64,000 nt of DNA, from IMG/VR virus record IMGVR_UViG_3300042887_005053, positions 124,001 to 188,000 of that record, one strand, 5' to 3'. Below are positions 18,364 to 64,000 of the stretch, in pieces. Below the pieces are notes generated by a model. The model saw only the letters and a program-made list of their open reading frames with translations, made no database searches and was not told the origin of the DNA. A program made the translations under genes and the position numbers. Position 1 is the stretch's first letter. Each line of letters starts with the position of its first letter.

Positions 18364-20160
18364 ATGCCTGTTTACACCGTTTCTAATAATCCAAAGAATA
18401 TACCAGGATTAAGGTTTTGGTTGGATGCCGCTGATGAGTCGACAGTAGATTATTTTAATAAAACAATTGGTGATTTTGCTGCAAGGACATATGGTGATAC
18501 TAGTGGTATTCAAATGCCAAATCAACCGAATAGTACTACATATCCTAACTTGCAAGCAGCTTTAGATCCAATTAATGGGTTTGTTACTTTAGAAATGGGA
18601 GTTGCTTCTGCACAGGTGTTATCTCCACTACCTATGCCTGGTACAGTATCATATAACATGGTGACATCAATTAGAGATAAAATTTCAAATACACTTGTAA
18701 TTTCTACATATTCATTCACACGGGGTAATACTACCTCAAGAACGATCAGACCTAATTCGTTAATTGGTACACAATCACTAGGAAGAACCCAGTCTATCGT
18801 TGGAACAGTTAATTTGGTTGGTGATTATCGAACTATGTCAAGAAGTATGCCATATGAGTATAATATTCCAGCACGATTGTACCCAGATTCTTGGTTTGGA
18901 TTTGCAAGAAAATATCCAAGATATGAAGTAGGAGCAGTAAACGGAAAAAGTGCAATAAAATTCAACAAACCATTTCCTGGAGAAATTGGTATGATTGCTG
19001 ACAATGTAGGTTTACTTGATAGTGCAACATATACGGTTTTTTGTGTTTATGCTCCTGTCAATCCAACGAGTTCCCTACAACTAGGTGCTGGGCTAACTGC
19101 TCAAGGTCAATATGTCGTATCAATTTATGATTCTAATCGAATTTCAAGACACGGTGGATATCCTAATCTTGGATTTTTCTATGGTGATGGTAATCCTTAC
19201 AATCAATCTATTGTTGTTACAACTCAATCGACTACTTTTTCCAGATTTATAAGATGGTCAAAGAATACTATGAATACAGCAAACAGTTCGATAGTTATTG
19301 CTCAGTTTAGAAATTCGGCCACATCTTCCAATGGGATACCTTTGTATAAGATTCTTACTGAGTCGAATAATTATTTTATGTACGGTTTTACTGGTGTAGG
19401 TATTAATTCTGGATCAGGGAGTTTCTTTGATCATAGAAGAAATAACTCTAGATTTGTTATTGGCTATAATCCTACACTAGGTACAAGCTCATCACAAAGA
19501 GAGATATATAATTCGGGCCCGAAACAATTTACTGGCTACTTTTGTGAGTTTTTATATTATGATCGAGCTCTGACAGACTTGGAAATGTCAAAAGTAAATC
19601 AGTATTTAGTAAAGAAGTGGAATGGACCAGTGAAACAGTTTCCAGAAAGTTTCATGGTAAGAGACTATACTGTGACTGGTATGCAGCAAACTACCACAAA
19701 CATCAGTAATACAAATAGAACAGGTGCTTATCAATTTGAATATTTTTGGCAAACTACTGCTGGAGCACAACAAGGTAGAAATGCTACGGTCACTCCGATT
19801 TTAGTCAACACCACACAGCCAATTTTGAGTGGTACTCCGATGTATTGTAGATTGGAGATAATTCCAAATTTAGCTACTGGTAGTGCGGGTCACACGAATA
19901 CTTGGAGACATTGGGGTATTTGGTGTGGTGATACTTCTGGCACTCCATTTGGTAGCTACAGATGGAGTTCAAGAAAACCAGACTTAGTATTCAGACCTGG
20001 ATTAACCCAGGGTGTTTATGAGTCTACATTTTGTTGGCCACAGACTGGTAACTCGATGAAATGTGGTTGGGCTTCAACTTTGGGAATCCCTACTCAAGAC
20101 TACGGATGGACTTTTTCTGGTTGGATAAACATGCAGTTTGGAAACTTAGAATCTATTTAA
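18364..20160 (+). CDS. LamG/ConA-like domain virion protein
   Basis: 598 aa. N-terminal IPGLRFWLDAAD and later FTGYFCEFLYYDRALTD.E...VNQYL..KW, the characteristic termini of LamG-like domains. Its 3' end overlaps the convergent 20146..20415 by 15 nt. Confidence 0.6.
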   Translation: MPVYTVSNNPKNIPGLRFWLDAADESTVDYFNKTIGDFAARTYGDTSGIQMPNQPNSTTYPNLQAALDPINGFVTLEMGVASAQVLSPLPMPGTVSYNMVTSIRDKISNTLVISTYSFTRGNTTSRTIRPNSLIGTQSLGRTQSIVGTVNLVGDYRTMSRSMPYEYNIPARLYPDSWFGFARKYPRYEVGAVNGKSAIKFNKPFPGEIGMIADNVGLLDSATYTVFCVYAPVNPTSSLQLGAGLTAQGQYVVSIYDSNRISRHGGYPNLGFFYGDGNPYNQSIVVTTQSTTFSRFIRWSKNTMNTANSSIVIAQFRNSATSSNGIPLYKILTESNNYFMYGFTGVGINSGSGSFFDHRRNNSRFVIGYNPTLGTSSSQREIYNSGPKQFTGYFCEFLYYDRALTDLEMSKVNQYLVKKWNGPVKQFPESFMVRDYTVTGMQQTTTNISNTNRTGAYQFEYFWQTTAGAQQGRNATVTPILVNTTQPILSGTPMYCRLEIIPNLATGSAGHTNTWRHWGIWCGDTSGTPFGSYRWSSRKPDLVFRPGLTQGVYESTFCWPQTGNSMKCGWASTLGIPTQDYGWTFSGWINMQFGNLESI

Positions 20161-20415
20161 TAGTTCATCTAAATTTTGTTTATTAAAATCAACTAGATTA
20201 TCTCCGCCATTTTTTAGATGATTATTTAATAACTCTTGATAATCTTCATAAGTGTAAAATTTTCCATCTATACCCATAATTACTTGAGTGTCAAATTTAG
20301 AAAGTGAATTTGGTAAATTTTGCTCTGGATAATTGGGTCCCATAACATGTTGACCAACTAATTCCCAACCACTAATCGACTCATTAAATTCATTAAATTT
20401 TTTAATTTTCATCAT
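20146..20415 (-). CDS. Small protein with capsid-targeting-like N-terminus
   Basis: 89 aa starting MMKIKKFNEFNES. Overlaps the upstream gene, suggesting translational coupling. Confidence 0.65.
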   Translation of the reverse strand: MMKIKKFNEFNESISGWELVGQHVMGPNYPEQNLPNSLSKFDTQVIMGIDGKFYTYEDYQELLNNHLKNGGDNLVDFNKQNLDELLNRF

Positions 20416-20872
20416 CTGTTATAGGAATTTTTTCGAAGTACTCTTCCTGAGAAGTAAGTGAGTAACAATCGTGTTTGAAATCATAGGACAAATTATACAA
20501 AAACCTATCATATATTTTAGTAGTCTCTCCATGTTTCAATTTTAAAATTGAGACATCATTTTCAAAGTCATTATCAATTGAAATGATTTCATCATCAATT
20601 TTACCAAAACTATCATACAAATCACAGATAACTTTTTTACCAGATGATCTTAGTTCATCAATCTTAGAGCAAACATCATTTTTACTTAGATGTGAGAAAC
20701 TCATTAAATCTTTTTCCAAAACTTTGTCAAACTTAGATAGAAATTCTTCTTCTCTTTTGGTTAGTTTTTCACTTTTTGAAATTTTATCCAAAATAGAGTT
20801 AAGAGTCTCATCTTTTACAGACTCTCTCAAATTTAAATATTTCGACCATTTTGTAAATGTCATAATTTTCAT
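20402..20872 (-). CDS. Hypothetical protein, targeting-like N-terminus plus LNSILDKI...LT..EEEFL motif
   Basis: 156 aa starting MKIMTFTKWSKYLNLRES. The late motif lies on the minus strand at 20881-20889. Confidence 0.65.
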   Translation of the reverse strand: MKIMTFTKWSKYLNLRESVKDETLNSILDKISKSEKLTKREEEFLSKFDKVLEKDLMSFSHLSKNDVCSKIDELRSSGKKVICDLYDSFGKIDDEIISIDNDFENDVSILKLKHGETTKIYDRFLYNLSYDFKHDCYSLTSQEEYFEKIPITDDEN

Positions 20873-30866: not shown

Positions 30867-32237
30867 ATGACTAAAATATCAAATTATTCACAATTTATAA
30901 CAGAAGCATTTCTAAATAAAACACAAGAAAAAGCTATTGACACTATTCTACAATACCTTAAAAAGAAAATAGGTGTTGATTTTTATTCATATGAAGAAAT
31001 ATGGAACATTCAAAAAAGTGACGAGTTTCTTAAAGGTCAACTTTTTTTAACTCTATCATCAAATAAAGCAATTAGATTTAACTGGATCGAAAGAGACATA
31101 TCAAGTGAGATACATTCAATAGATCTATGGACTGATTTTGAATTTGATTCTAATCCTGACTTCACTTTACTATTAAATGAACTTTCGGTTGTTAAGGCTT
31201 TGCCTCATGTAGTAGACTTTTATAAAAATCCAGAAATAATAGTAAAAACAAGTAAGAAAGATGTAGTATTTGAAGATTTAGAAATCGAGGATACTGATCC
31301 AAGAAAAAGACTTGAAGATGAAAGAAAAAAACTATCAAGATTAAGAAGTCCTGAGAAAATTGAACTTCAGAAAAGAAAAATAGAAAGAATAGAAGCAATT
31401 GTTGCACAAACTGAAAACTCTTCTATTGAAAGTGAAAAAATAAATCAACTTGATGATGAAATGAAAATTGATGTTTTTAAATCAATCGAACTTTATACTA
31501 CTCAAGTTGCAAGAGGCAAGTCAAACTCATTGATTATATCTGGTGATTCGGGTGTTGGAAAGACCCAAACCGTGAAAGATACCTTAACTTCACTTGGTAT
31601 GAGAAAAGATGATGATTATTATTTTGCAACTGGTACTGCAACAACAGCTGGTTTATATGAATTACTATTTAAGAACCGAAACAAACTAATTGTATTTGAT
31701 GACTGTGATTCGGTATTAAAAGATCCAGAATCGGTCAATATATTAAAAGGAGCACTTGATACCTATGATGTTAGAGAAATATCTAAATTATCGAAAGGTA
31801 ATACTTTTGATTCATCTGGATTAAGTGATGAAGAAGTTGATGTCCAGTTTAGCGAGACTGGTAAGTTTCCAAATAAATTCGATTTTACTGGACAAGTAAT
31901 ATTTATATCGAACTTACCAGAAAATAAATTTGATAAAGCACTATTATCGAGAAGTTTACATGTTGATGTGCATTTAGATAGACAAGAATTATTCGAAAGA
32001 ATGAAGTCTATAATGACAAGAATATCTCCAGATGTAGATTTTGAGAAGAAACTGGAGGCATTAGAATATTTAACTTTTATATGTAACACTTATCCAACTA
32101 AGTTTGATCTTAATATCAGAACATTAATACATTCAATCAATTTGAGAGCTCATAATGAAGAAATGATTAAGATTGGTGACAAAGAAGAACAAGTTTGGAA
32201 AGTTTTAATTAAAAAATATTTGGTTAAGTCAAGATGA
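30867..32237 (+). CDS. AAA+ ATPase with targeting-like N-terminus
   Basis: Walker A GDSGVGKT, Walker B IVFDDCD, sensor-1 FISN, ALLSRS arginine finger. Starts MTKISNYSQFITEA and has a coiled-coil linker. Confidence 0.85.
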   Translation: MTKISNYSQFITEAFLNKTQEKAIDTILQYLKKKIGVDFYSYEEIWNIQKSDEFLKGQLFLTLSSNKAIRFNWIERDISSEIHSIDLWTDFEFDSNPDFTLLLNELSVVKALPHVVDFYKNPEIIVKTSKKDVVFEDLEIEDTDPRKRLEDERKKLSRLRSPEKIELQKRKIERIEAIVAQTENSSIESEKINQLDDEMKIDVFKSIELYTTQVARGKSNSLIISGDSGVGKTQTVKDTLTSLGMRKDDDYYFATGTATTAGLYELLFKNRNKLIVFDDCDSVLKDPESVNILKGALDTYDVREISKLSKGNTFDSSGLSDEEVDVQFSETGKFPNKFDFTGQVIFISNLPENKFDKALLSRSLHVDVHLDRQELFERMKSIMTRISPDVDFEKKLEALEYLTFICNTYPTKFDLNIRTLIHSINLRAHNEEMIKIGDKEEQVWKVLIKKYLVKSR

Positions 32238-32812
32238 AACATTTAGAACTATTTGAATCATTCACTCTTATTAGTGAGAATCTGAAATATCATGTTGATA
32301 ATAATATTCCGGTTTTAGAGAATGTGTTTAGACCACATTCAAAAGCTTTTTATGATTTGATAAAAGAAGCAAGAAATCTATTTGATGGTGGTAAAATTGG
32401 TGTATCAGAACATGATAAACATTTATTTGAAACAACCGATTTAGGTTACTTTGATATATTTGAGAATGAAGTAGTACCACTTGATTTACCGATTGAAGTT
32501 GTTGAGGAAGTAAATGAGGCTGAGTATCACGGAAAAGAAGTTGAATTAAATAAACCAATTAGAAGTTCTGGTCCTAAAAAATATAAAGTTTATGTCAGGA
32601 ATCCTAAAACTAAAAAAGTTATATGTGTTAATTTCGGGGATGTGAAAGGTGGACTAACTGCTAAAGTAAGTGATCCAGATGCTCGTAGAAGTTTTGCTGC
32701 TCGTCATCAATGTCACCTAAAGAAAGATAAGACAAAGCCTGGTTACTGGGCCTGTCGTGCGAATAGATACGCTAATTTGTGGGGTGGTAAAACATATCCC
32801 GGATACTGGTAA
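32234..32812 (+). CDS. Conserved T4-like phage protein (EAEYHG...NFG...SFAARHQC...YWAC domain)
   Basis: 192 aa starting MKHLELFESF. The C-terminal domain resembles a small protein common in cyanophage-like T4 relatives. ATGA overlap with the ATPase stop. Confidence 0.7.
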   Translation: MKHLELFESFTLISENLKYHVDNNIPVLENVFRPHSKAFYDLIKEARNLFDGGKIGVSEHDKHLFETTDLGYFDIFENEVVPLDLPIEVVEEVNEAEYHGKEVELNKPIRSSGPKKYKVYVRNPKTKKVICVNFGDVKGGLTAKVSDPDARRSFAARHQCHLKKDKTKPGYWACRANRYANLWGGKTYPGYW

Positions 32813-32826
32813 AAATATATAGAACT

Positions 32827-33735
32827 ATGAAATACTTAAATACCTACAAATTATTTGAATCAGAAGAAGTAGTAAGCAACGAAGAAGTTACTGAACTAAT
32901 TGAAGAGTGTAAAGACATTGTTGAGACATTCAATGAGTCAGAAGATACTTTTAAAGTAGCTAATTATGAAACGGGATTTGTTGCATATGACTCTTATTTG
33001 AAAAGAATAAGAAGTGGTGACTTTGACTCGAGACAGTCACATGAATCTGATATGGCTGCTATTAAATTTAATCTTGGTTTATCAAGTGATTTGAGTAACG
33101 GATATTTTAGAGATAACGAAGAAAGTGTTACTACAGAAAAAATAGACGGATTAATTGAACTATTGAGTAAATCGAAGATACTAGTTCAGAGATTGTCGAG
33201 ATATTGTACTACAATTTATTATAAAATGACAGGTAACTCAATTAGATTCATTTTAATATTCAAAAATCCAGATGAGGGTAGTAGTAAGGCAGCAAAAGTT
33301 ACAAGATTATATAACAAGCTATCAAAAGATTTTAAAGATTATGACATGTGGAAAACTATGAATTTGGTTCAACTTAATCAAAGATCAAATGATAGAATTC
33401 CAGAAAAATATAGAGAGTTATATAGTTTACTTAAAACTAATCCTAATCTAATTGATGGTAGATATGGTCAATGGGATGAAACAAGAAGAAGTAATTTACA
33501 GTTAAGATTTTCTTGTTCTGAAACATTTGATGGTAATACAATTATTGTTAATGTCACTGGATTCAAATACAAAACATATATGATGGATAGATTCAAATCA
33601 ATTAGATTATCTAATGAAGAGAAAGTAGAAGCAATGAAATGCATCGAACAGAAAGTTAAAAATAGTTTAAGAAGTGATGCCGATTCAATTGAAACTTCAA
33701 TTGAAGGAAATCAGATAAAAATTAAGGTGAAATAA
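32827..33735 (+). CDS. Hypothetical protein with targeting-like N-terminus
   Basis: 302 aa starting MKYLNTYKLFES. AAATATATA at 32813-32821. Confidence 0.75.
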   Translation: MKYLNTYKLFESEEVVSNEEVTELIEECKDIVETFNESEDTFKVANYETGFVAYDSYLKRIRSGDFDSRQSHESDMAAIKFNLGLSSDLSNGYFRDNEESVTTEKIDGLIELLSKSKILVQRLSRYCTTIYYKMTGNSIRFILIFKNPDEGSSKAAKVTRLYNKLSKDFKDYDMWKTMNLVQLNQRSNDRIPEKYRELYSLLKTNPNLIDGRYGQWDETRRSNLQLRFSCSETFDGNTIIVNVTGFKYKTYMMDRFKSIRLSNEEKVEAMKCIEQKVKNSLRSDADSIETSIEGNQIKIKVK

Positions 33736-33974
33736 TGAAATACTTAAAGAAGTTTGAAGGATTTTCTAACAGAACTTGTGATAGATGTGGCGAGCGAACT
33801 AATACAATGAGTATGTCCTGGTTAAACACAGATGAGTGTTGTATGAATTGTTTAGAAATTGAAAAAGGAGAACCAGATTATATTTTGGCTAAAGAAATAG
33901 AATCCGAAGAAGTTAGAAAAGGTAATCTAAACTATAAAGGTATAAGAAATGAAGATAAACTGACACCGAGATAG
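33735..33974 (+). CDS. Small Zn-finger protein (CxxC...CCxxC)
   Basis: 79 aa, MKYLKKFEGF then CDRC...SMSWLNTDECCMNC...GNLNYKGI. TAATG coupling with the upstream gene. Confidence 0.7.
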   Translation: MKYLKKFEGFSNRTCDRCGERTNTMSMSWLNTDECCMNCLEIEKGEPDYILAKEIESEEVRKGNLNYKGIRNEDKLTPR

Positions 33975-35124: not shown

Positions 35125-35134
35125 TATATAGAGT

Positions 35135-35716
35135 ATGAAACATTTGAAATTATTTGAAGAATTTATTGATTTCAACTTAGATTGGGTATCAGCCAAAATG
35201 AATGAACTATCAGATTTGGTATCTGATTTTTCAAATATTGAGTTTAAATATCATATTGAAAAAGTCAAGGATAATGAAGATTTACAGGGTCTTTTAGTTA
35301 TAGAACTTACAGCGACTGATGCGAACATAACTCTTATATGGACTATTGATTTAGACTCTCCATCAATTACTATTGAAGAAATTGAAGGTGATGAACATGA
35401 AAATATTTATGATTCAAAACTTGAAAGTATTGAACAAGCTCTTGATTTAGTTGAGAAAAATATACAAGATTTATTTGATATTAATGAGAGAGTCAAGGCT
35501 CAAAGATATAAAGGAAAAAAAATACCTGGTAAATACTTAGCTGGACCACATCCTGGAAAAATGAAGAAGGAAATTGATAAGTATAGAGGTAAAAGTGAAT
35601 ATAAAAAAGAATGGGATGCTGATTATACTACTGGAAAAGGTGGTAAAGGTAAAAGAGTAAAAACTAAGAAATCATCAGCCACAAAAGCTTACCAAAAAAT
35701 GTTTGGTGATAAATAA
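35135..35716 (+). CDS. Two-part protein: acidic N-terminal domain with targeting motif plus basic C-terminal domain
   Basis: 193 aa starting MKHLKLFEEF. After DINERV the sequence becomes Lys-rich (IPGKYL...KTKKSSATKAYQKMFG). Confidence 0.7.
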   Translation: MKHLKLFEEFIDFNLDWVSAKMNELSDLVSDFSNIEFKYHIEKVKDNEDLQGLLVIELTATDANITLIWTIDLDSPSITIEEIEGDEHENIYDSKLESIEQALDLVEKNIQDLFDINERVKAQRYKGKKIPGKYLAGPHPGKMKKEIDKYRGKSEYKKEWDADYTTGKGGKGKRVKTKKSSATKAYQKMFGDK

Positions 35717-35727: not shown

Positions 35728-36288
35728 ATGGAAATTAAGAAATTTATTCGTCAAGAAAAAACTACAAATGTAGAAAAACCACAAACAAGTGGAACAGTAA
35801 TCACTCCTTCAAAGTTGACTGAAGAAACCATTTCAATTTTGACTGAAAGAATAAAAGATGAGTATACTGCTCACTATTTCTATAGATCAGCTGCTAACTG
35901 GTGTCGTAACATGAACTATAAAAAAGCATCACAATTCTTTGATAATGAATCAAGTTCAGAATTAGAACATGCTAAAGGATTACAAGAGTATATGGATGAC
36001 TTTAATGTTCAACCACATATTCTACAAACAGAAACAAACTTTGAGTTTGATTCATTAGTTGATATTATAAATGGTGCATATCAAATGGAACATTCGTTGA
36101 TGAATTCATATAATCAAAGTTCATCAGCATTATTTACTACTGACTTAACTACATTTGATTTCTTAGCTAATTATAGAACAATTCAAAAAGAAGCTGTAAT
36201 TGAGTATTCTGATTTATTGAATGCATTAATGTTAGTAAATCATACTGATAAGTTTCAGGTTCTTTATTTTGAACAAACATATTTTTAA
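35728..36288 (+). CDS. ftn: Phage-encoded non-heme ferritin (FtnA-like)
   Basis: 186 aa. By-eye alignment with E. coli FtnA: DEYTAHYFY..AANWC, ASQFF..E..SELEHA, AYQMEH, DLTTFDFLANY..IQKE, LYF. Ferroxidase residues equivalent to E17/Y24/E50/H53/E94/Q127 are present. Confidence 0.85.
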   Translation: MEIKKFIRQEKTTNVEKPQTSGTVITPSKLTEETISILTERIKDEYTAHYFYRSAANWCRNMNYKKASQFFDNESSSELEHAKGLQEYMDDFNVQPHILQTETNFEFDSLVDIINGAYQMEHSLMNSYNQSSSALFTTDLTTFDFLANYRTIQKEAVIEYSDLLNALMLVNHTDKFQVLYFEQTYF

Positions 36289-36292: not shown

Positions 36293-36553
36293 GTGAAATA
36301 CTTAAAGAAATTTGAAGCATATACATTCGAGGACTTTACTCTCAGTGATATTGAAGATGTTAAAGATTTGTTAGAATATGGTTTGCCTATTGAACAAATT
36401 GCGATAGAATTAGACTTTACGGTCGATAAAGTGAAACAAATAGTTCACTCTATTGAAAAGAATAAAAAAACGACTACAAAAGGATGTGGTTGTTGTTCAG
36501 ATTGTACCGGTGAAGTGGATTGTGAATGTGGTTGTGTTGAGTGTGAATGCTAA
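36293..36553 (+). CDS. HTH-like domain plus metallothionein-like Cys-rich tail
   Basis: GTG start gives MKYLKKFEAY. LPIEQIAIELDFTVDKVKQIV looks like an HTH. The last 22 aa contain 9 Cys (CGCCSDCTGEVDCECGCVECEC). Confidence 0.7.
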   Translation: MKYLKKFEAYTFEDFTLSDIEDVKDLLEYGLPIEQIAIELDFTVDKVKQIVHSIEKNKKTTTKGCGCCSDCTGEVDCECGCVECEC

Positions 36554-36589: not shown

Positions 36590-36961
36590 ATGGAAAAATT
36601 AATGACATTCGAATCTTTCTCTGATGAAATAGATTATGAAAACTACTACTATTTAGTAGAAGATATATTACTACTTGAAGAAGTAACAGCTGGGTCAGTT
36701 GATACTGCTGGGTCAAAAGCATCAAAGATGATAAAAAAGAAATCAGAACAAAGTGGTATTCCTGTTGGAATTCTTAAAAAGGTTTATAAGCGAGGGCAAG
36801 CTGCTTGGAATGCTGGTCATCGTCCAGGTACACCACAACAAGCTTGGGCTACTGGTAGGGTAAATAGTTTTATAACTGGTGCTGGTGGAGCTAGAAAAGC
36901 TGACAATGACTTATGGGCAAAAGCTAAAGCTGCTAAAGCTAGAAAAAAGAAGAAAAAATAA
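36590..36961 (+). CDS. Conserved T4-like phage protein (DUF5824-like)
   Basis: 123 aa starting MEKLMTFESF. KKSEQSGIPVGILKKVYKRGQAAWNAGHRPGTPQQAWATGRVNSFI resembles a conserved cyanophage-type family. Confidence 0.65.
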   Translation: MEKLMTFESFSDEIDYENYYYLVEDILLLEEVTAGSVDTAGSKASKMIKKKSEQSGIPVGILKKVYKRGQAAWNAGHRPGTPQQAWATGRVNSFITGAGGARKADNDLWAKAKAAKARKKKKK

Positions 36962-37425
36962 TGAAATACTTAAAAAGATTTAATGAAAATTTAGATAATA
37001 ATTCTTATAAAATTCATATACCCGAAAAATATTCAGGGGTTAGAATGGAATTTGGGGAATTTGCCTCACCACAAGACATAATTGATACGTACAATCAGAT
37101 AGTAGAAGAAGGAGTTCCTTTGGTAAGTTATTCCGAGGATGGGTTCTTCACTAATGAAGATGATGAAGAAATTGAAGAGTTTATAATTCTTGATGAATTG
37201 AATTATGCTATTGTTGGTGAAGAAGAAGATAATATGGGAGATTTACCAAAACAAAAAAGATTTGGTGATGGTAATGAAAATGAAATCTATTTAACCAATA
37301 ATGTAAGATTCCACCGTAAAGGGAATGAGTTAACTTTAAGTTACACCCCAACTAAAATTGGAGGGGGACTTAGAATATCTGATGAACAGAAGAATATGTT
37401 AATTGATTTTTTAACCAAGAATTAA
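36961..37425 (+). CDS. Hypothetical protein with targeting motif, possibly frameshift-truncated (extension to 37510)
   Basis: 154 aa starting MKYLKRFNEN. A +1 frame continues protein-like sequence to a TAA at 37508-37510 that abuts the terminator. Confidence 0.65.
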   Translation: MKYLKRFNENLDNNSYKIHIPEKYSGVRMEFGEFASPQDIIDTYNQIVEEGVPLVSYSEDGFFTNEDDEEIEEFIILDELNYAIVGEEEDNMGDLPKQKRFGDGNENEIYLTNNVRFHRKGNELTLSYTPTKIGGGLRISDEQKNMLIDFLTKN

Positions 37426-55116: not shown

Positions 55117-55692
55117 TCACTTTTTGGTGAACTTATTAAAACGATAAAGATCAATTCTCTTCTTACTAGCCATTAAATCATCTTTGAAGACCTTTAGTTT
55201 ATCCTTGGCTATTTTTTCTAAGTTGACTATTTCCATTTGAAGTTTAGAAATATCCTGTGTTTTTTGACGAATCTTATCCTCAGTAAGTTTGATATTAGCT
55301 GAAAGAGAATCCTTTGAACTTGGATTTGCTTTTATATTGGATTGTTCGTCACTGATATCTGTTTTCCAGTCTTTAATCTGATCCTGTAGATTCTTCAAAT
55401 CTCTTCTTTTATCACAAGATTGTGCCCAAATCGCTAAAACTGGGTTATGAAATTTCAATTTCTTTTTATTATCAGTTTTATCAATTATTTTTTGAGCAGC
55501 TAATTTATCGATTAAGTCTTTTTCATCTTTATAAGTCATATAAATGTTATTTACTGTAACTTTAAGTCTGTCAAAATCTTTGATTTGATTTTCAAGCTCA
55601 TTATATCTATTCATGTCCGATGCGATCTGAGGTGGATCGGTTTTATCAGCATTGTATAATTCTAAAATAAATTCTTGAAAGTACTTAATCAT
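55117..55692 (-). CDS. Coiled-coil protein with targeting-like N-terminus
   Basis: 191 aa starting MIKYFQEFILE, close to the T4 IPIII MKTYQEFIAE. Heptad-rich. Confidence 0.7.
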   Translation of the reverse strand: MIKYFQEFILELYNADKTDPPQIASDMNRYNELENQIKDFDRLKVTVNNIYMTYKDEKDLIDKLAAQKIIDKTDNKKKLKFHNPVLAIWAQSCDKRRDLKNLQDQIKDWKTDISDEQSNIKANPSSKDSLSANIKLTEDKIRQKTQDISKLQMEIVNLEKIAKDKLKVFKDDLMASKKRIDLYRFNKFTKK

Positions 55693-55693: not shown

Positions 55694-58501
55694 TTAAATT
55701 ATGTCAAAATCATTCATTTTAGACCTCATTTTATCCAATCCTAGAATATCATATTTAGGTCTATCATCTGGATCAATCACTTTTATAGTCTCTAACTTAC
55801 CCTCTTGAACATTGTTCTTAGAAAGAGCTTCTATTTTTTGAAAGTTCATTTTTAGATCTTGTATATTACTAAAAGTGTTATTAGATGTAACTTCAGCGAC
55901 TTTCATCTCAATAACTCTGTCTTTTGACAATTTAGGATATTTATTTATGTTGATTACTGCTACGAATAAAGGTTCATTAGGTACAAAAGATAGATTTTTT
56001 GGTAACTCCAACTCTTTTGAATCAAGTTTATTTTTCAAGTAAGTACTAAAGATTGATTGTTTTGGAGTTTTTTCATATTTATGAAACTTAATAACAATTC
56101 CTTTATCTCTAGTTCCATTAATTTGACCTTGTATAAATCCAATCAAATATTTGGTAACTTTATCTTCCTTATAAGTAATTTTGAAAAATTCTCTACCGTA
56201 CTTATCATCCTTACCGAAAAGACTTGTCACTATATCAGCTCCTCTTCCAAGTTGGCTATAAAGTGAGAACACTAATTGCTTTTCACTACCCATGTCATCT
56301 TTCTTTATTTTTCCTGGACCTGGTTCTGGTGTATCAGATGTTTTTTCTATGTCACTATTTCCCCCAAAATAATCAGTCAGTAATCTATGTCTCTTAGATC
56401 TGAAATCTCTATCTTTACCACCAGATCCTAACATATCATTAATAAAAGTAAATAAAGTCCTACCTGAGCCAGCTTTTTGATTAGGTCCTCTATTTTTGAA
56501 TTTCGCATTTGCTAATATTTTTCTGTACTTTGTATCTTCTAATAGTTTCATAATACCATCTTCCCATTTTTCAAATGGAACATTAGCTGCCCAGGGTCCA
56601 ACTGATGGACCGGCATCTTTTGACCAAGATGGATATTCACCTTTTCCGATATATGTGTACTCTCTAAATGTTTTCTGAGAAATCACGCCGTTTGGTCTAC
56701 CAGAGGGTATGACCTCAGTTGCATACATTTTATATGCTCTGCCAAAGATATTCACGATTCTAATGATGTTGTCTTTGAAAGATTCAGCGTCAATCTCTAT
56801 TTCTTTTTCTTCTAACTCTTTATCTGTATCTTCTTGGAGTTTTTTAGCTTCTTTTTCGTCGATTTTCCATTCATCTTCTTCTCCCTTTTTGAAGAATTCA
56901 AACCAAATAGTTGATATTTTATCATTTATCAGTTCCTGATCAGACTTCGAGGCTTGTTCATCTTTGTCAGTATCTTCATCAGTTTCCATTTCAATATCAT
57001 CTGCTTCATTTACAAAAGAAAAATAGTTATGTATAAATGATTCGTTCTTTTCTTCTTTATCTTCTTTTTTCTCCTTTTTAAGAGAAGGATAAAGCTTTTT
57101 AAGTTGATTAAAAGATTTTATGAACTTATTAAGACATTCTTTTGCATCAGTAAGTGCGTTAACTAGTCCCATATCTTCTCTAAATGCAAGAATTATTCTA
57201 GCTATTAGTGAAATTGACTTCGAAATATCACTATATGAAATAGATTGTTCAGCTTCTTTAATTAGTTCTTCAAAAGAAATTGGCTTACCAACAGTTGCTT
57301 CATTCATTACGACTTCTCTACCTATTTTTGTGATAGTATCTACAATGATTGCATTGTTTGTTTTTGATTTAGTAAGCAATTCTTGAATTCTTGGTAATGT
57401 TTTTATAATGCCAGATTTAGACCACGAGTTTAATACTTTATTCCAAGCTGCTCTCGCATTTGACTCCGCTAACTTCAATTCTGCTTCTTCAAATATTGGA
57501 AGAGATTCATTTTCATAAAATAAAGATTCTGCGACTTTTTCACCAGCTTTGAGTGTTGTAACTTGTAAAGGTCTGCCATCGGGTCCTTTCTTTGTATCTG
57601 AGTTTAGTATAGGTGTGAGAGAATCTCTACGAACACTCATCGGTGCTGAGTTTGGTAGATATGATTTAGTCTTCTCATCCCTAAAAATAACAAAAACATT
57701 GGGTTTGATTGTACCTGATTGAACAACATCATCTTTAGTTAAGAACTTTTTGTCAATTCCTCTCTTCACAGCATGTTCCAGAGAAATGACTAAAACAGTA
57801 GTTTTTTTGCCATCTTTTGATTTGTGTGTATATTCTTTACCTACTTCGATTGATTTCTCTGAAGTAATCTTCTTTTTTGAAATGATTTCATTCAAGTCTA
57901 ATATGGATTCTAAAAGATCAATTGTAGTTTCATAGAACTCTTTATTTGAGCTTGTTTCTTCTTGTTTTTCTTCTTCCGATTCTTTTGGTTCAAAATCGAT
58001 TTCCAATAAAGCTTTTCTATAATCTTCAAGTTTTTTTACTAATAAATCTTTATTAGGTAAGTCTTTTTTATCTACTTTCTCAACATCTTTGATTGTTGTT
58101 GAGATAAGACCAGAATCATCAGATTTATCACCTAATAATATTGTCAATTTTTCATCAATCTCTTTGTTTGAAGTAGATTCTTTATAAACCTCTGTTATAA
58201 GAAATTTTACTTTTATTTTTTCTATTTCTTTTTTAGTATTTTCACCAAATGCAGAAGCGGCTATTAAATTATTTAATTCATTTTCAACATCTTTTACTAA
58301 AGAACCAATTCTAGCAGCTTGAAAATAAATTTTACCTTTTCTGATTGTTGAATTGATTAATCTACCTAATAGAGATCCTCCCCAGGTTATATCATTTTCA
58401 AAAGCTTCCTTTATTAATAAAGAAGATTCGAAGTCCTTTTGATTAAATTCAGTTCTTGTTTCTTTGATTAAAAATTCTTGTCTGTGCTTGAGATATCGCA
58501 T
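55694..58501 (-). CDS. Large charged putative internal head protein
   Basis: 935 aa starting MRYLKHRQEFLIKE. Internal LIKEA (twice), IFEEA and FVNEA sites resemble prohead-protease (I/L/V)-x-E sites. Late motif at 58524-58532. Confidence 0.6.
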   Translation of the reverse strand: MRYLKHRQEFLIKETRTEFNQKDFESSLLIKEAFENDITWGGSLLGRLINSTIRKGKIYFQAARIGSLVKDVENELNNLIAASAFGENTKKEIEKIKVKFLITEVYKESTSNKEIDEKLTILLGDKSDDSGLISTTIKDVEKVDKKDLPNKDLLVKKLEDYRKALLEIDFEPKESEEEKQEETSSNKEFYETTIDLLESILDLNEIISKKKITSEKSIEVGKEYTHKSKDGKKTTVLVISLEHAVKRGIDKKFLTKDDVVQSGTIKPNVFVIFRDEKTKSYLPNSAPMSVRRDSLTPILNSDTKKGPDGRPLQVTTLKAGEKVAESLFYENESLPIFEEAELKLAESNARAAWNKVLNSWSKSGIIKTLPRIQELLTKSKTNNAIIVDTITKIGREVVMNEATVGKPISFEELIKEAEQSISYSDISKSISLIARIILAFREDMGLVNALTDAKECLNKFIKSFNQLKKLYPSLKKEKKEDKEEKNESFIHNYFSFVNEADDIEMETDEDTDKDEQASKSDQELINDKISTIWFEFFKKGEEDEWKIDEKEAKKLQEDTDKELEEKEIEIDAESFKDNIIRIVNIFGRAYKMYATEVIPSGRPNGVISQKTFREYTYIGKGEYPSWSKDAGPSVGPWAANVPFEKWEDGIMKLLEDTKYRKILANAKFKNRGPNQKAGSGRTLFTFINDMLGSGGKDRDFRSKRHRLLTDYFGGNSDIEKTSDTPEPGPGKIKKDDMGSEKQLVFSLYSQLGRGADIVTSLFGKDDKYGREFFKITYKEDKVTKYLIGFIQGQINGTRDKGIVIKFHKYEKTPKQSIFSTYLKNKLDSKELELPKNLSFVPNEPLFVAVININKYPKLSKDRVIEMKVAEVTSNNTFSNIQDLKMNFQKIEALSKNNVQEGKLETIKVIDPDDRPKYDILGLDKMRSKMNDFDII

Positions 58502-59991: not shown

Positions 59992-59996
59992 GAGAC

Positions 59997-61116: not shown

Positions 61117-61736
61117 TCTTTCTTATTTTTAAGATAGTTATCGATCATATTATTTAAACTTCTCGAATCCACAATTTTACCATCTTCCTTAGTATTATCT
61201 TCTATTTGTTGTTCTAAATTCTTTTGTTCCATTGACTCTGACATTTCATTCAGACCTAAATCTATTCTCATTTCTTTATAGAATTTCTCAAGTTCTGTTC
61301 TCTGGCTTTGTGAGAACTTAATATTATCTCGAATCTGTGAAATTGACTGATTAATAACTTCGTGCATTCTAGCTGATGTGTCGCCATTATCAACTTGTCT
61401 TAATTGTGTAAGAAAGTTTTTTCTTGTCATCTTCTGAAGAAAAATAGTGTCTGCATAAACTTGAGCATCTTCTTTCATCTTCTTAATTATATAATCATGG
61501 TGTGCGATTTGAGGATTATCGCCTAAATACAAGTCGACTAATGACTCTAATACTTCAGTTGCTTGATTTTTTGAGTCTTCTAAGTCAGCATCATAGTCAT
61601 AAATTTGAATTTCTCCAAGATCCGGTAGATCTTCTCTTTTAGCTAGATATTTACTAACATCAAGTTCTTTATTATCTTCTTGAATACGATTAAACTCATT
61701 CTGAAGATCATTTATTTTATCTTCTTTCTTGCTCAT
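61113..61736 (-). CDS. gp16: Terminase small subunit (T4 gp16-like)
   Basis: 207 aa, helical. GDTSARMHEVINQSI resembles the gp16 ..PRAYEV..QLI core and IVDSRSLNNMI resembles its C-terminal strand. Adjacent to TerL. Confidence 0.6.
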   Translation of the reverse strand: MSKKEDKINDLQNEFNRIQEDNKELDVSKYLAKREDLPDLGEIQIYDYDADLEDSKNQATEVLESLVDLYLGDNPQIAHHDYIIKKMKEDAQVYADTIFLQKMTRKNFLTQLRQVDNGDTSARMHEVINQSISQIRDNIKFSQSQRTELEKFYKEMRIDLGLNEMSESMEQKNLEQQIEDNTKEDGKIVDSRSLNNMIDNYLKNKKD

Positions 61737-61752
61737 AGGAACAATATATTTC

Positions 61753-61764
61753 TTATATATATTG
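61753..61764. promoter_or_regulatory. Single bidirectional late motif shared by TerS and TerL
   Basis: TTATATATA on + (61753-61761) and CAATATATA on - (61756-61764) overlap on the palindromic ATATATAT core, about 20 nt from each start. Confidence 0.6.
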
Positions 61765-61781
61765 GAAAATTAATATTCCTT

Positions 61782-63926
61782 ATGGCGGTTGCAAAGAAAC
61801 CAACAGAAGAAAAAAAATTTGTATTTACTAGTAAAATCGTTGATGAAGTAACAGAAAAAATTAACGATGGTGTTGTTGTAAAAAGATTTCAAAATCCTTG
61901 GTTCAAGAATGAAGTAGGTGTTAGAAGAGCCGGTCTAACATTTATGATGACTGAAGATGAAATACAAGAATACATTAGGTGTAAAATAGATATACAATAC
62001 TTTGCTGAAAAATATTGTAGAATAAAAACAGAGGATGGTTCGGTTCAAAATATCAAACTTAGAGATTATCAAAGAGATATTTTAGATCTTTATACAAAAA
62101 ATCGATTTAGTATTCTTTGTGGGTCAAGGCAGATTGGTAAAACTATCAATGCTGCGATCGCTATGCTACATTTTATAACATTCAATAATGATAAAAACAT
62201 TATGATTGTTGCTAATGTTAGAGGAACGACCGTCGAAATTATTGATAAAATTAAAAATATCTATATACAGCTACCATTTTTCTTGAAGTCTGCTATCAAA
62301 AACTGGAATCAACAATCTATGATTTTTGAAAACGGTTGTCGTATAAAATCAGCAGCTAGAAGCAAAACACCAGCCATCGGTTTCACTATTGACTTTTTGT
62401 ATCTCGATGAGTTCGCTCATATTCCAAGTAATATCATCGAACCATACTATACAGCTGCTTTTCCAACCGTTTCGGCTATTGAGAATTCCAAGATCGTTAT
62501 TACTTCTACCCCAAATGGTATGAATCTTTTTTATAGATTATTAACAGACGCTGAAAGACCAGAAGGTGATGCTTTAAAGAACAACTATAAACCAATGAGG
62601 GTTTATTGGTATCAAGTTCCTGGTAGATTTGTTACCTTCTTTAGATTGAATAATCACAGAATGTATGACCAGAAAGTAACTAAAGAATTAATCTTCGAAC
62701 AAGTTTTTGCTGAATTTGGTGATATTACAAAAGTAGAGATGAGGTATAACTCTGACTTAATGAAAGATGTAATTTACATCTATAATAATGATGTTTGTCC
62801 AGATACACTTGTAAAATCTTTCCAAATTAAAAAAGATGATGGACTAGAAATACCAATATTTAGTGTTGCTGAAGTCACAACTTGGAAAGAAGAAGCTATT
62901 AAAGATATTGGTGGAGAAGATGCTTTTAATCAAGAATACGGCCTTAGATTCGTTAATGCCACAAGATCTTTATTAAGTGAGAGTTTAATAGATCAATTAT
63001 TGAATAATAAGAAGAATTATGTATATGAAGAAATATTGGAATTTTCAAAGAAGTTAAAGTTTTCTTATAGTGATTTAAAGTGGATTGATGATGATGATGT
63101 TTTTAATCCACTAATGAGAAATTCAATTAAAGGGGTTATATCGGTTGATATATCTGAAGGATTGGGTCAAGACTATTCGATAATTAATATATTTAAGATA
63201 TCTCCAAAGAACAGTGAAATAATTGATTTTCAACAATTAAATTATACGCAATTATCTGACTTTTTTTGTTTAGAACAAATAGGAATTTTTAGGTCAAATT
63301 TTGTATCAGTAAAACAGTTAGCTGAGTTATTTTATTGCTTGTTATTTGATTATTTTAATTATGAGAATTTTAAAGTAGTTTTAGAATTAAATAACTATGG
63401 TAATGAGTTTTTAGCACATTTGCCATATGTATTTGATGGAAATAACAACTATGGTTCGAATGTTTTCTTTAGATATAAACACAGAGCTGATGCAACAGAA
63501 GAAAAAGTAGGATTAAAAGTTGGTGAAAATAAAAACATGCTTGTTAAAGAGTATCAAGAAGCTATGGATAAGAAAAACTTTATAATTACAAATGAAGATA
63601 ACATCAGAGAGATAACTACATTTGTAAAGCACATAACGCCATCTGGAAATGTTAGATATGCAGCAGATATCGGACACGATGATACTGTTATGACTCTTGT
63701 AAACTCATCCAGTGTTTTCTCTAAATATGAATTCAGAGAAATGGTTGAGGATTATGCATCAAAGGTTGTTGATTCTCATACTTTGAGTGGATGGAAAGAT
63801 ATTCTAAAGAGAAGTGACTTTAAAGAAGGTGTTGATTATTCTTCTATTATTAACATCAATAGACAAAGAAGATTTATGAATCAATATAAGACAAACAATA
63901 ATAATAATAATTGGTTTGGAAAATAA
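61782..63926 (+). CDS. gp17: Terminase large subunit (T4 gp17-like)
   Basis: KLRDYQ adenine motif, Walker A GSRQIGKT, Walker B LYLDEFA, TSTPNG, nuclease VDISEGLGQDYS and HDDTVM. True start is most likely MAVAKK at 61782. Confidence 0.95.
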   Translation: MAVAKKPTEEKKFVFTSKIVDEVTEKINDGVVVKRFQNPWFKNEVGVRRAGLTFMMTEDEIQEYIRCKIDIQYFAEKYCRIKTEDGSVQNIKLRDYQRDILDLYTKNRFSILCGSRQIGKTINAAIAMLHFITFNNDKNIMIVANVRGTTVEIIDKIKNIYIQLPFFLKSAIKNWNQQSMIFENGCRIKSAARSKTPAIGFTIDFLYLDEFAHIPSNIIEPYYTAAFPTVSAIENSKIVITSTPNGMNLFYRLLTDAERPEGDALKNNYKPMRVYWYQVPGRFVTFFRLNNHRMYDQKVTKELIFEQVFAEFGDITKVEMRYNSDLMKDVIYIYNNDVCPDTLVKSFQIKKDDGLEIPIFSVAEVTTWKEEAIKDIGGEDAFNQEYGLRFVNATRSLLSESLIDQLLNNKKNYVYEEILEFSKKLKFSYSDLKWIDDDDVFNPLMRNSIKGVISVDISEGLGQDYSIINIFKISPKNSEIIDFQQLNYTQLSDFFCLEQIGIFRSNFVSVKQLAELFYCLLFDYFNYENFKVVLELNNYGNEFLAHLPYVFDGNNNYGSNVFFRYKHRADATEEKVGLKVGENKNMLVKEYQEAMDKKNFIITNEDNIREITTFVKHITPSGNVRYAADIGHDDTVMTLVNSSSVFSKYEFREMVEDYASKVVDSHTLSGWKDILKRSDFKEGVDYSSIININRQRRFMNQYKTNNNNNNWFGK

Positions 63927-63937
63927 ATATATAATTT

Positions 63938-64000
63938 ATGAATAGAATATCAACTTATCAGCAATTTAATGAGGAAATTTTGGGTGGATTAGGAGACAAG
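63938..64000 (+). CDS. 5' end of a gene with targeting-like N-terminus (truncated)
   Basis: MNRISTYQQFNEEILGGLGDK, preceded by AAATATATA at 63925-63933 and running off the window. Confidence 0.6.
   Translation, partial: MNRISTYQQFNEEILGGLGDK

What the first reader, a model, noticed from the sequence alone, without database searches (positions are those of the whole stretch)
20146..64000. Candidate capsid-cargo addressing system: 14 unrelated proteins share a T4-CTS-like N-terminal peptide
Seen: N-termini MMKIKKFNEFNES (20415-), MKIMTFTKWSKYLNLRES (20872-), MTKISNYSQFITEA (30867), MKHLELFESF (32234), MKYLNTYKLFES (32827), MKYLKKFEGF (33735), MKHLKLFEEF (35135), MEIKKFIRQE (35728), MKYLKKFEAY (36293), MEKLMTFESF (36590), MKYLKRFNEN (36961), MIKYFQEFILE (55692-), MRYLKHRQEFLIKE (58501-) and MNRISTYQQFNEE (63938). 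The downstream domains are unrelated. Tail, fibre, terminase and nuclease proteins lack the peptide. Known: T4 internal proteins carry a ~10-aa capsid targeting sequence (IPIII MKTYQEFIAE) removed by protease gp21 after Glu, and IPI* blocks the GmrSD restriction enzyme. Inference: this phage loads a large, modular payload into its head and injects it, including enzymes not known as T4 cargo. This is my best candidate for an undescribed system here.
Basis: partly seen in the sequence, partly recalled or inferred. Interest (0 to 1): 0.85.

Follow-up and report, generated by a model that had tools for sequence, protein, structure and literature searches.

The report
Capsid-address tags on huge-phage proteins
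A giant bacterial virus starts many unrelated proteins with the same roughly 10-residue peptide, which resembles phage T4's tag for loading proteins into the virus head; if it works that way, these phages pre-pack far more kinds of protein than any known phage.

Summary
The motif is specific to gene starts, is selected at the peptide level, and sits on proteins with no detectable similarity to each other.

The window comes from a Mahaphage-type huge myophage (relatives of 634-735 kb, predicted Bacteroidetes hosts). In the complete 642-kb relative, 143 of 975 genes (15%) carry the tag. Only 5 of 3,240 internal Met positions match, and none of the 21 structural and 8 replication genes examined carries it. 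Only 4 matches to one variant occur in 596 Gb of cellular genomes.

Support for a T4-like capsid targeting sequence:
- Hydrophobic/aromatic residues at positions 4 and 7, followed by hydrophobic-x-Glu.
- The window's own contig encodes a T4-type portal and a gp21-like prohead protease. Its C-terminal half holds 10 tandem copies of YSEY(I/L)AE, close to T4's YQEFIAE.
- Tagged genes share a promoter-like element with virion genes.
- They are soluble and poorly conserved between relatives.

Caveats:
- Packaging and cleavage are untested.
- Tagged proteins are acidic, unlike the basic T4 internal proteins.
- The resemblance to the repeat is limited to seven residues.

Verdict: a probable, greatly expanded variant of the T4 capsid-targeting system. 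Confidence is about 0.55.

The parts
20146..20415 (-). 89-aa protein; tag MMKIKKFNEFNES encoded at 20377-20415
   Evidence: no Pfam or PHROG family; F-N-E sites at residues 7-9 and 10-12
20402..20872 (-). 156-aa protein; weak, long tag MKIMTFTKWSKYLNLRES encoded at 20819-20872
   Evidence: syntenic orthologue in the relative starts MEIMGFKKFIKHYLLGES and keeps the ...ES end
30867..32237 (+). 456-aa protein with a weak P-loop NTPase match; tag MTKISNYSQFITEA (T4-IPIII-like YxxFIxEA) encoded at 30867-30908
   Evidence: phrog_1250 and weak AAA_16 match only from about residue 163; orthologue in the relative starts MKIKKYQAFYEAF
32234..32812 (+). 192-aa protein; tag MKHLELFESF encoded at 32234-32263
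   Evidence: overlaps the upstream gene, so it is not a leaderless start
32827..33735 (+). 302-aa protein; tag MKYLNTYKLFES encoded at 32827-32862
   Evidence: the promoter-like element ATATATA begins 13 nt before the ATG
33735..33974 (+). 79-aa protein with a CxxC motif (phrog_27033); tag MKYLKKFEGF encoded at 33735-33764
35135..35716 (+). 193-aa protein; tag MKHLKLFEEF encoded at 35135-35164; alpha/beta core followed by a basic tail
   Evidence: 374 metagenomic homologues whose N-termini switch between MKYLKIFEEF, MIKKWNEFIREF and MKIKLFREFIE. AlphaFold2 gives residues 1-12 pLDDT below 50 and not packed, with a core from about residue 15 to 113 at pLDDT near 80.
35728..36288 (+). 186-aa ferritin-like protein; weak tag MEIKKFIRQE encoded at 35728-35757, then a polar linker
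   Evidence: Pfam Ferritin 3e-17 starts at residue 36, so the first 35 residues are an appended extension
36293..36553 (+). 86-aa protein starting at GTG; tag (M)KYLKKFEAY encoded at 36293-36322
36590..36961 (+). 123-aa DUF5824 protein; tag MEKLMTFESF encoded at 36590-36619
   Evidence: the Pfam match begins at residue 49
36961..37425 (+). 154-aa protein; tag MKYLKRFNEN encoded at 36961-36990
55117..55692 (-). 191-aa protein next to the tail-sheath gene; tag MIKYFQEFILE encoded at 55660-55692
   Evidence: the gene at the same position in the relative starts MKYLKGYSSFNED but has no BLASTP similarity
55694..58501 (-). 935-aa protein; weak tag MRYLKHRQEFLIKE encoded at 58460-58501
   Evidence: orthologue in the relative starts MRYLKQREEFIRNN; no family match
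63938..64000 (+). Start of a 158-aa protein cut by the window end; tag MNRISTYQQFNEE
   Evidence: full gene seen on the source contig at L180:15923-16399
61782..63926 (+). T4-type large terminase, untagged. It marks the head and packaging region that continues beyond the window to the portal and the repeat-bearing prohead protease.
   Evidence: Terminase_6N 1e-19; phmmer with T4 gp17 7e-49. The source contig was called as 714 aa starting MAVAKKP. Portal_T4 and the protease lie at L180:2178-3860 and L180:2-1585.

Best explanation
The shared N-terminal peptide is most likely a T4-type capsid targeting sequence, meaning a short cleavable propeptide.

Shown:
- It is an N-terminus-specific, peptide-level motif on many unrelated, mostly soluble proteins.
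- It is found almost only in viral contigs, not in cellular genomes.
- It sits in a phage with a T4-type portal, major capsid protein and gp21-like prohead serine protease.

Inferred mechanism:
1. The residue-4 hydrophobic and residue-7 aromatic side chains dock the newly made protein onto the assembling prohead core.
2. In this clade that core is probably built from the long C-terminal extension of the protease. The extension consists of 10-11 tandem 14-residue units, NIxYSEY(I/L)AExLDK, and its core heptad resembles the T4 tag YQEFIAE.
3. After the shell closes, the protease cuts after the Glu of the hydrophobic-x-Glu site at residues 8-14 of each tag, and at the (I/L)AE site of each repeat.
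4. This frees the cargo inside the head and clears the scaffold as small peptides.
5. The cargo then leaves with the DNA at infection.

The cargo set is large, 14 or more genes in this window and about 15% of genes in a complete relative. It turns over quickly between relatives, as expected for host-takeover and counter-defence proteins.
For: 1. N-terminal specificity. In the relative, 143 of 975 gene starts carry the tag against 5 of 3,240 internal Met positions. In the window, 6 of 2,054 ATGs match the core pattern and all are gene starts.

2. Peptide-level selection. Synonymous codons vary freely inside the tag (His CAC/CAT 55/45, Tyr3 51/49, four Leu codons). GC3 is 0.232 against 0.272 expected. 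Upstream DNA is not conserved.

3. Unrelated carriers. 120 tagged proteins fall into 102 BLASTP clusters once the first 15 residues are removed. Single members carry PPK2, lysozyme, RNA ligase, NUDIX, methyltransferase, ankyrin, HNH and DHH domains. In the window there is a ferritin-like protein and a protein with a weak P-loop NTPase match.

4. Match to T4.
- ipII and ipIII start MKTYQEFIAE, and ipI starts MKTFKEF.
- A pattern derived from the huge phage picks only ipII, ipIII and 61.1 among 156 T4 ORFs.
- The T4 gp23 maturation site FGSFLTE|A has the same form.
- Genetics place T4 targeting at residues 4 and 7 and processing at residues 8 and 10 (PMC9026906).
- gp21 cuts after Glu in I/LxE and more weakly at xxE (PMC12991175).

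5. Candidate cleavage sites. A Glu lies within residues 8-14 in 93% of tags against 38% of other proteins. Hydrophobic-x-Glu occurs in residues 6-16 in 80% against 25%. The residue after the Glu is Ser in 39%.

6. Head machinery on the window's own contig: Portal_T4 at 1e-58, and a protease with weak S77 and above-threshold S80 matches. The relative's orthologue matches phrog_207 at 6e-28 and lies between Portal_T4 and a Gp23 capsid protein. A related repeat-bearing protease scores 55.8 bits on Peptidase_S77, above the cut-off of 27.

7. Repeats. There are 10 Yxx Y(I/L)AE copies in the window phage's protease and 11 in the relative's, with a 42-nt period. They are conserved in four further huge relatives. 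The YSEYIAEN pattern occurs in at least 120 viral contigs, and among the 80 loci read nearly all repeat-bearing ORFs are 350-830 aa.

8. In a related subclade, the K/A/E-rich scaffold-like protein next to the capsid gene begins MxKLK(T/S)YxEF(I/V)(A/N)E. That sequence is type A and type B tag at once.

9. Shared regulation. The AATATAT element lies within 60 nt upstream of 15/21 structural genes, 77/143 tagged genes, 2/8 replication genes and 127/802 other genes. Tagged against other gives an odds ratio of 6.2, p = 9e-21.

10. Cargo-like properties.
- TM-like segments occur in 4/143 tagged against 79/832 other proteins.
- Only 5/13 tagged window proteins have a hit in the relative, against 23/31 untagged.
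- In the one model made, the tag is unpacked (pLDDT 33 for residues 1-10).

11. Virus specificity. One tag variant gives 35 loci in the viral collection and only 4 in 596 Gb of cellular genomes. One of the 4 has the same length as a viral contig.
Against: - No virion proteome or N-terminal data exist for any member. I found no cultured relative carrying the tag: 41 kb of Tenacibaculum phage PTm1 has none.
- About 140 different cargo species per genome is far beyond anything documented. T4 has about 5, and SPN3US has about 50 head proteins in all (PMC7411985).
- Tagged proteins are mostly acidic: median pI 5.16 against 6.04, and 62% are below 5.5. T4's IPII and IPIII are basic (PMC9026906).
- A profile built from the full 14-residue repeat does not enrich for tagged N-termini (6 of the top 100 against 5.2 expected). 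The tag-repeat resemblance therefore rests on a 7-residue core.
- Four of the 14 window tags, and about 20% genome-wide, lack a hydrophobic P3.
- In homologues of 245-277 aa of one tagged family, the tag-like segment follows an extra PF14192 domain.
- The promoter-like element also occurs before some replication genes, so the timing argument is only statistical.
- The S77 match of the window's own protease is below Pfam's cut-off (19.6 against 27 bits).
Confidence: 0.55

Rival explanations
1. The peptide is a docking tag for some shared partner other than the prohead core. Candidates are a phage-built compartment, a chaperone or assembly factor, or a timed-degradation system.
For: The features actually shown fit any shared-partner tag: N-terminal, peptide-level, on unrelated soluble proteins, virus-specific. 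The very large number of carriers (15% of genes) and their acidic pI fit cytoplasmic host-takeover proteins better than DNA-embedded internal proteins. The phage encodes a ClpS homologue, the N-degron adaptor, just beyond the window (2e-17).
Against: It does not explain the resemblance to the T4 capsid targeting sequence at the genetically defined positions (PMC9026906). It does not explain the conserved Glu followed by Ser, the CTS-like heptad repeated in the prohead protease, the same N-terminus on a head-module scaffold-like protein, or the promoter element shared with virion genes. ClpS recognises N-terminal Leu, Phe, Tyr or Trp (established knowledge), not Met-Lys.
Confidence: 0.25
2. The conserved first codons serve expression rather than the protein. 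On this view they are an initiation or early-elongation signal for leaderless or near-leaderless mRNAs in a host without Shine-Dalgarno sites.
For: The TATATA-type element ends 0-8 nt before the ATG in 53% of tagged genes against 15% of others. Lys-2 uses AAA in 83% against 61% genome-wide, and GC3 in the tag is slightly low.
Against: - Synonymous sites vary almost as in the rest of the genome.
- Half of the window's tagged genes have no such element and are coupled to an upstream gene.
- The 21 structural genes examined all lack the tag.
- The motif is essentially absent from 185,579 cellular species' genomes.
- Position-specific His/Tyr-3, Leu-4, Tyr/Phe-7 and Glu are not explained by A+T richness.
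Confidence: 0.07
3. The shared start is only a relic of common descent (a diverged multigene family) or of compositional chance in a 30% G+C genome.
For: Tagged genes lie in arrays. One BLASTP cluster of 11 paralogues exists in the relative.
Against: There are 102 clusters among 120 proteins, and well-known unrelated folds carry the tag. Internal Met positions match about 100 times less often. Within one homologous family the tag switches subtype while keeping the key residues.
Confidence: 0.03

Closest known systems
Phage T4 capsid targeting sequence (CTS) of internal proteins IPI, IPII, IPIII and Alt (Mullaney and Black 1996, as reviewed in PMC9026906, PMC5694885 and PMC3012670)
   Same: - A peptide at the extreme N-terminus of otherwise unrelated proteins.
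- Met-Lys start, hydrophobic/aromatic residues at positions 4 and 7, then hydrophobic-x-Glu.
- A T4-type portal, Gp23-type capsid protein and gp21-like protease in the genome.
- The carrier genes differ between related phages.
   Different: - Scale: about 15% of genes against 3-5 in T4.
- The dominant form is MK(H/Y)LKx(Y/F) with Leu at position 4 and Glu at 8, 9 or 11, not MKTYQEFIAE.
- The carriers are mostly acidic and include enzymes.
- The protease is fused to 10-11 tandem CTS-like repeats, which T4 gp21 lacks. No [YFW]xx[YFW][ILV]xE match was found in T4 gp21, gp22, gp67 or gp68.
- Function here is untested.
Propeptides of ejection and inner-body proteins in phiKZ-like giant phages (SPN3US, phiKZ, 201phi2-1; PMC5694885, PMC7411985, PMC10052503)
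   Same: Giant myophages load many proteins into the head. A gp21-related protease (Pfam S80, which the window's protease also matches) cuts after Glu. The propeptides are thought to target proteins to the prohead.
   Different: Most of those propeptides are about 80-160 residues long and not conserved between cargo proteins, and the cleavage motif is S/A/G-x-E. Here the tag is a conserved peptide of about 10-14 residues with an aromatic or aliphatic P3.
Encapsulin cargo-loading peptides
   Same: A short terminal peptide directs unrelated enzymes, including ferritin-like proteins, into an HK97-fold shell (established knowledge). One window carrier is ferritin-like.
   Different: Encapsulin peptides are usually C-terminal, bind the shell itself, are not cleaved and have a different consensus. 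This is an analogy only.

Membership tests
T4-type capsid targeting sequence | Located at the extreme N-terminus of the precursor | tested here: met
   All 14 window tags start at the initiator codon. In the relative, 143 gene starts match against 5 of 3,240 internal Met positions.
T4-type capsid targeting sequence | Hydrophobic/aromatic residues at positions 4 and 7, the targeting determinants of IPIII (PMC9026906) | tested here: met
   By my reading of the sequences, 10 of the 14 window tags have an aliphatic or aromatic residue 4 and Tyr/Phe at 7. In the relative, position 7 is Tyr/Phe in 119 of 120 type-A tags and position 10 is aromatic in 71 of 120. That set was defined partly by this pattern, so the internal-Met control is what shows specificity.
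T4-type capsid targeting sequence | I/L-x-Glu processing site about 8-19 residues from the start | tested here: inconclusive
   Hydrophobic-x-Glu occurs within residues 6-16 in 80% of tags against 25% of other proteins, and in 10 of the 14 window tags. P3 is often Tyr/Phe rather than Ile/Leu, and four window tags have only x-Phe-Glu. Real cleavage is unknown.
T4-type capsid targeting sequence | Genome encodes a gp21-family prohead protease within a T4-type head module | tested here: met
   On the window's contig: Portal_T4 at 1e-58, and a protease with Peptidase_S80 at 25.2 bits (cut-off 23.4) and S77 at 19.6 bits (below the cut-off of 27). The orthologue matches phrog_207 at 6e-28 and sits beside a Gp23 capsid protein. 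A related contig's protease scores S77 at 55.8 bits. tblastn reaches T4-like cyanophage proteases.
T4-type capsid targeting sequence | Affinity for a scaffolding core (gp22-type) into which the cargo co-assembles | tested here: inconclusive
   No gp22 homologue was found by phmmer. A candidate core is the repeat region of the protease, which has a CTS-like heptad. A tagged scaffold-like protein exists in a subclade. A full-repeat profile does not retrieve the tags.
T4-type capsid targeting sequence | Carrier is found in virions with the peptide removed | not testable with these tools
   There is no cultured member and no proteome.
phiKZ-type long propeptides | Propeptides mostly around 80-160 residues, cut at S/A/G-x-Glu | tested here: not met
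   The conserved segment is 10-14 residues long. Family-specific sequence or Pfam domains start at residues 13-49. P3 is aromatic or aliphatic.
Sec, Tat or lipoprotein signal peptide | Hydrophobic core of 10 or more residues after a basic N-region | tested here: not met
   The tag is amphipathic and charged. Only 4 of 143 carriers have any TM-like stretch.
Mobile promoter/stem-loop cassettes of T4-type phages (PeSL; PMC2839356, PMC4122927) | Conservation at the DNA level across the promoter and gene start | tested here: not met
   Upstream DNA is not alignable apart from a short TATATA element. Synonymous sites in the tag vary.

The most novel reading that the evidence does not exclude
Mahaphage-type huge phages devote about one gene in seven to proteins that are pre-loaded into the head and delivered with the DNA. 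That would be more than 100 distinct cargo species per virion population. All would be addressed by one short peptide that imitates a repeat unit of a protease-scaffold fusion protein. If so, the repeat would also be a candidate for the core-side partner of CTS-type tags.
Probability: 0.4. Interest if true: 0.85.

Novelty: new variant of a known kind. Interest (0 to 1): 0.68.

Why it matters
If the tags work as in T4, the largest known phages would enter cells carrying a large, fast-evolving set of ready-made proteins. That could help explain how a 600-kb genome survives slow entry and host defences. It would also assign a location, the virion, to a large share of their unknown genes.

The tag is easy to recognise. 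It could therefore be used to list candidate injected counter-defence proteins directly from metagenomes. The repeat-bearing protease offers a concrete, testable partner for capsid-targeting peptides. It may also give a longer, modular scaffold for the protein-packaging applications already built on the T4 tag.

Tried and rejected
- Megablast of 20 kb of the window against 50,697 phage records found nothing. Relatives appeared only at the protein level.
- A full-text search for the motif strings MKHLK, MKYLK, MKHIK and MKYIK returned only unrelated papers. Four further literature searches found no description of this tag in huge phages.
- I looked for a cultured phage with the tag and a virion proteome. 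Tenacibaculum phage PTm1 has no tags in 41 kb. A tagged CHAP-domain protein from a viral contig has no close cultured relative.
- I tried to use the TATATA element as a late-gene marker. It is enriched before structural and tagged genes, but it also occurs before some replication genes, so it is suggestive only.
- A position-specific matrix from the nine in-register 14-residue repeat units of the window phage's protease was scanned over the relative's proteome. It did not enrich for N-termini. I therefore claim resemblance only for the 7-residue core.
- The scaffold-like tagged protein next to the capsid gene in a subclade has no Pfam or PHROG family. It looks low-complexity and helical, so I did not model it.
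- Fold searches of the one AlphaFold2 model (PDB and viral libraries) gave no convincing match, so that carrier's function stays unknown.
- phmmer with T4 gp21, gp22, gp23, gp55, gp67, gp68 and the internal proteins found nothing in the relative. Only gp4, gp17, gp18 and gp20 hit. Head genes had to be found with profile libraries instead.
Full report
**What the window is**

The window has 30% G+C and no Shine-Dalgarno sites. It encodes a contractile-tail virion module:
- a 1,407-aa sheath;
- a tube protein;
- baseplate and fibre proteins of up to 2,207 aa;
- a T4-type large terminase and an SbcD-like nuclease;
- three homing-endonuclease genes.

It has no nucleotide-level relative among 50,697 phage records. 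At the protein level its closest relatives are uncultured phages LR756502.1 (642 kb), LR745206.1 (635 kb), LR756504.1 (636 kb) and LR756501.1 (735 kb). Sheath identity reaches 61%. Those lengths match the four largest genomes of the Mahaphage clade, whose predicted hosts are Bacteroidetes (PMC7162821). The window's source contig is JGI 3300042887 Ga0453665_0000016, 204 kb long.

**The observation**

All 14 N-termini are present as described.
- The core pattern matches 6 of 2,054 ATG codons in six frames, and all 6 are gene starts.
- The DNA upstream is not conserved.
- The carriers show no BLASTP similarity to each other.
- Their family assignments differ or are absent. They include a weak P-loop NTPase match (with phrog_1250), a ferritin-like protein whose domain starts at residue 36, and DUF5824.
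- Virion, terminase and nuclease proteins lack the peptide.

**The phenomenon is genome-wide**

I fetched the complete 642-kb relative in 50-kb pieces and made a simple longest-ORF gene call of 975 genes.
- The strict pattern M[KR][HYNF][LIVM]xx[YFH] starts 114-120 genes, against 2 of 3,256 internal Met positions.
- Adding two looser forms gives 143 genes (15%), against 5 of 3,240 internal Met positions.
- With the first 15 residues removed, 120 carriers fall into 102 BLASTP clusters.
- Of 69 carriers of 170 aa or more, single members hold PPK2, lysozyme, RNA ligase, NUDIX, methyltransferase, ankyrin, HNH and DHH domains. Most have no Pfam family.
- None of the 21 structural and 8 replication genes examined starts with the tag.

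These patterns were written after looking at the data. The internal-Met controls are therefore the fair measure of specificity.

**Peptide signal or RNA signal**

Inside the tag, synonymous codons vary almost as elsewhere in the genome. His-3 is CAC/CAT 55/45, Tyr-3 is 51/49, Leu-4 uses four codons, and Glu is GAA/GAG 59/41. GC3 is 0.232 against 0.272 expected for the same amino acids. The constraint is therefore on the peptide.

One tag variant, written as a degenerate DNA pattern, gives 35 loci in the viral-contig collection. Those contigs are 7-476 kb long with 20-41% G+C, and most loci hold several tagged genes. The same pattern gives only 4 matches in 596 Gb of cellular genomes. One of those contigs has the same length as a viral contig. 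The tag is thus found almost only in viral contigs.

**Comparison with T4, read from the T4 record**

- ipII and ipIII start MKTYQEFIAE, and ipI starts MKTFKEF.
- The huge-phage pattern [YF]xxF[IVL]xE near the start picks only ipII, ipIII and 61.1 among 156 T4 ORFs.
- The gp23 maturation site (FGSFLTE|A, Glu65) has the same form.

In T4 IPIII, targeting depends on residues 4 and 7, and processing on residues 8 and 10 (PMC9026906). gp21 cuts after Glu in I/LxE and, more weakly, in xxE (PMC12991175).

The huge-phage tags keep Met-Lys, a hydrophobic residue 4 and an aromatic residue 7.
- A Glu lies within residues 8-14 in 93% of tags, against 38% of other proteins.
- Hydrophobic-x-Glu occurs in residues 6-16 in 80%, against 25%.
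- Ser follows the Glu in 39%.

Within one homologous family of 374 metagenomic proteins, the start switches between MKYLKIFEEF, MIKKWNEFIREF and MKIKLFREFIE. The apparent subtypes are therefore versions of one element.

**Head machinery**

The relative has three adjacent head genes: Portal_T4 (1e-57), a 699-aa head maturation protease (phrog_207 at 6e-28, weak S77), and a Gp23-type capsid protein (4e-28).

The protease's C-terminal half holds 11 tandem 14-residue units, KNIxYSEY(I/L)AExLDK, with a 42-nt period. The core YSEYIAE differs from T4's YQEFIAE at two positions, one of them Phe to Tyr.

Walking along the window's own contig reaches the same genes about 20 kb beyond the window. They are Portal_T4 (1e-58) and a protease cut by the contig end after 528 residues. 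That protease has 10 such repeats, an S80 match above Pfam's cut-off and an S77 match below it.

The repeats are conserved in four further huge relatives. The YSEYIAEN pattern occurs in at least 120 viral contigs. Among the 80 loci read, nearly all repeat-bearing ORFs are 350-830 aa. One of them scores 55.8 bits on Peptidase_S77, above the cut-off of 27.

In a subclade the gene order is portal, repeat-bearing protease, capsid protein, then a 364-392-aa K/A/E-rich scaffold-like protein. That protein begins MxKLK(T/S)YxEF(I/V)(A/N)E. This start is both MKHLKxYNE-like and YxxFIxE-like. It ties the tag to a head-module protein.

**Other supporting properties**

- The AATATAT promoter-like element lies within 60 nt upstream of 15/21 structural genes, 77/143 tagged genes, 2/8 replication genes and 127/802 other genes. 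Tagged against other gives an odds ratio of 6.2, p = 9e-21.
- Carriers rarely have TM-like segments: 4/143 against 79/832.
- Carriers are poorly conserved. Only 5 of 13 tagged window proteins hit the relative, against 23 of 31 untagged. This is like the variable internal-protein loci of T-even phages (PMC9026906).
- An AlphaFold2 model of the 35135-35716 protein (54-sequence alignment, mean pLDDT 63.7) leaves residues 1-12 unpacked with pLDDT below 50. They sit ahead of a confident alpha/beta core.

**Evidence that cuts the other way**

- Tagged proteins are acidic: median pI 5.16 against 6.04.
- A matrix built from the whole repeat unit does not retrieve tagged N-termini. The resemblance to the repeat is therefore a short-motif argument.
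- Some homologues carry an extra N-terminal domain ahead of the tag-like segment.
- About 140 cargo species per genome has no precedent.
- No cultured carrier was found.

**Conclusion**

The best explanation is an expanded T4-type capsid-targeting and processing system, with confidence about 0.55. The tag would dock on a core built from the protease's repeat region and be cut after the Glu. The main rival is a docking tag for some other partner (0.25). An expression-level signal (0.07) and common descent or chance (0.03) are unlikely. About 0.1 is left unassigned.

The concept of diverse cargo behind a conserved tag is known from T-even phages. The scale, the clade, the dominant variant and the repeat-bearing protease were not found described in the five literature searches.

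Noticed in passing
window, e.g. 32814-32822, 35121-35129, 20885-20893 (- strand), 39553-39561; L002-L015 genome-wide: A TAATATATA-like element sits at two fixed distances from start codons. It ends 0-8 nt before the ATG of about half of the tagged genes, which implies leaderless or near-leaderless mRNAs. Before sheath, tube, portal, protease, capsid and baseplate genes it lies 16-35 nt upstream and is followed by an A-rich leader.
   Followed up: partly
L180:15645-15926 (same contig, about 2.5 kb beyond the window's right end): The phage encodes a ClpS homologue, the N-degron adaptor of ClpAP (Pfam 2e-17). Its role in a phage with so many specially tagged N-termini is unexplained.
   Followed up: no
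window 39567-41129 (+), 49043-50740 (-), 34003-35124 (+): Two paralogous 520-565-aa homing-endonuclease-like genes (37% identical; phrog_3339, DUF7487) lie within the tail tube-fibre-sheath region. A third endonuclease interrupts the array of tagged genes. A further DUF7487 gene lies between the portal and protease genes on the contig (L180:1759-2166).
   Followed up: no
window 14310-18317 (+) and 42374-48997 (-): Two giant fibre-like proteins (1,335 and 2,207 aa) are paralogues. They give many staggered BLASTP alignments, which indicates long internal repeats. Both start MT(R/K)(I/V)LN(N/S)L.
   Followed up: no
window 50838-55061 (-): The tail sheath is 1,407 aa, about twice the length of T4 gp18. 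Its best match (phrog_34521) covers residues 1015-1396 and a weaker phrog_23 match starts at 889, so most of the N-terminal 900-1,000 residues are unassigned.
   Followed up: no
window 35135-35716 and its 374 homologues (P0001-P0120): This tagged family has a nearly invariant, very basic Lys/Gly/Arg-rich C-terminal 70 residues, predicted disordered, behind a small alpha/beta core. It is widespread in metagenomes, on contigs of up to 631 kb. Some members are fused to an N-terminal PF14192 domain.
   Followed up: partly
window 55117-55692 (-) versus L001:8121-8681: The genes at the same position next to the sheath gene in the window and in the relative share only the N-terminal tag. They have no BLASTP similarity, which suggests cargo replacement at a fixed locus.
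   Followed up: partly
L180:5831-6964: A glutamine-synthetase-like gene (Gln-synt_C) lies between the neck and portal genes on the source contig.
   Followed up: no
window 61680-63926: The mechanical ORF for the terminase opens at TTG 61680. The source's gene call, and the orthologue in the relative, start at the ATG at about 61782 (MAVAKKP...). Similarly, 36269 (TTG) against 36293 (GTG) for one tagged gene.
   Followed up: yes
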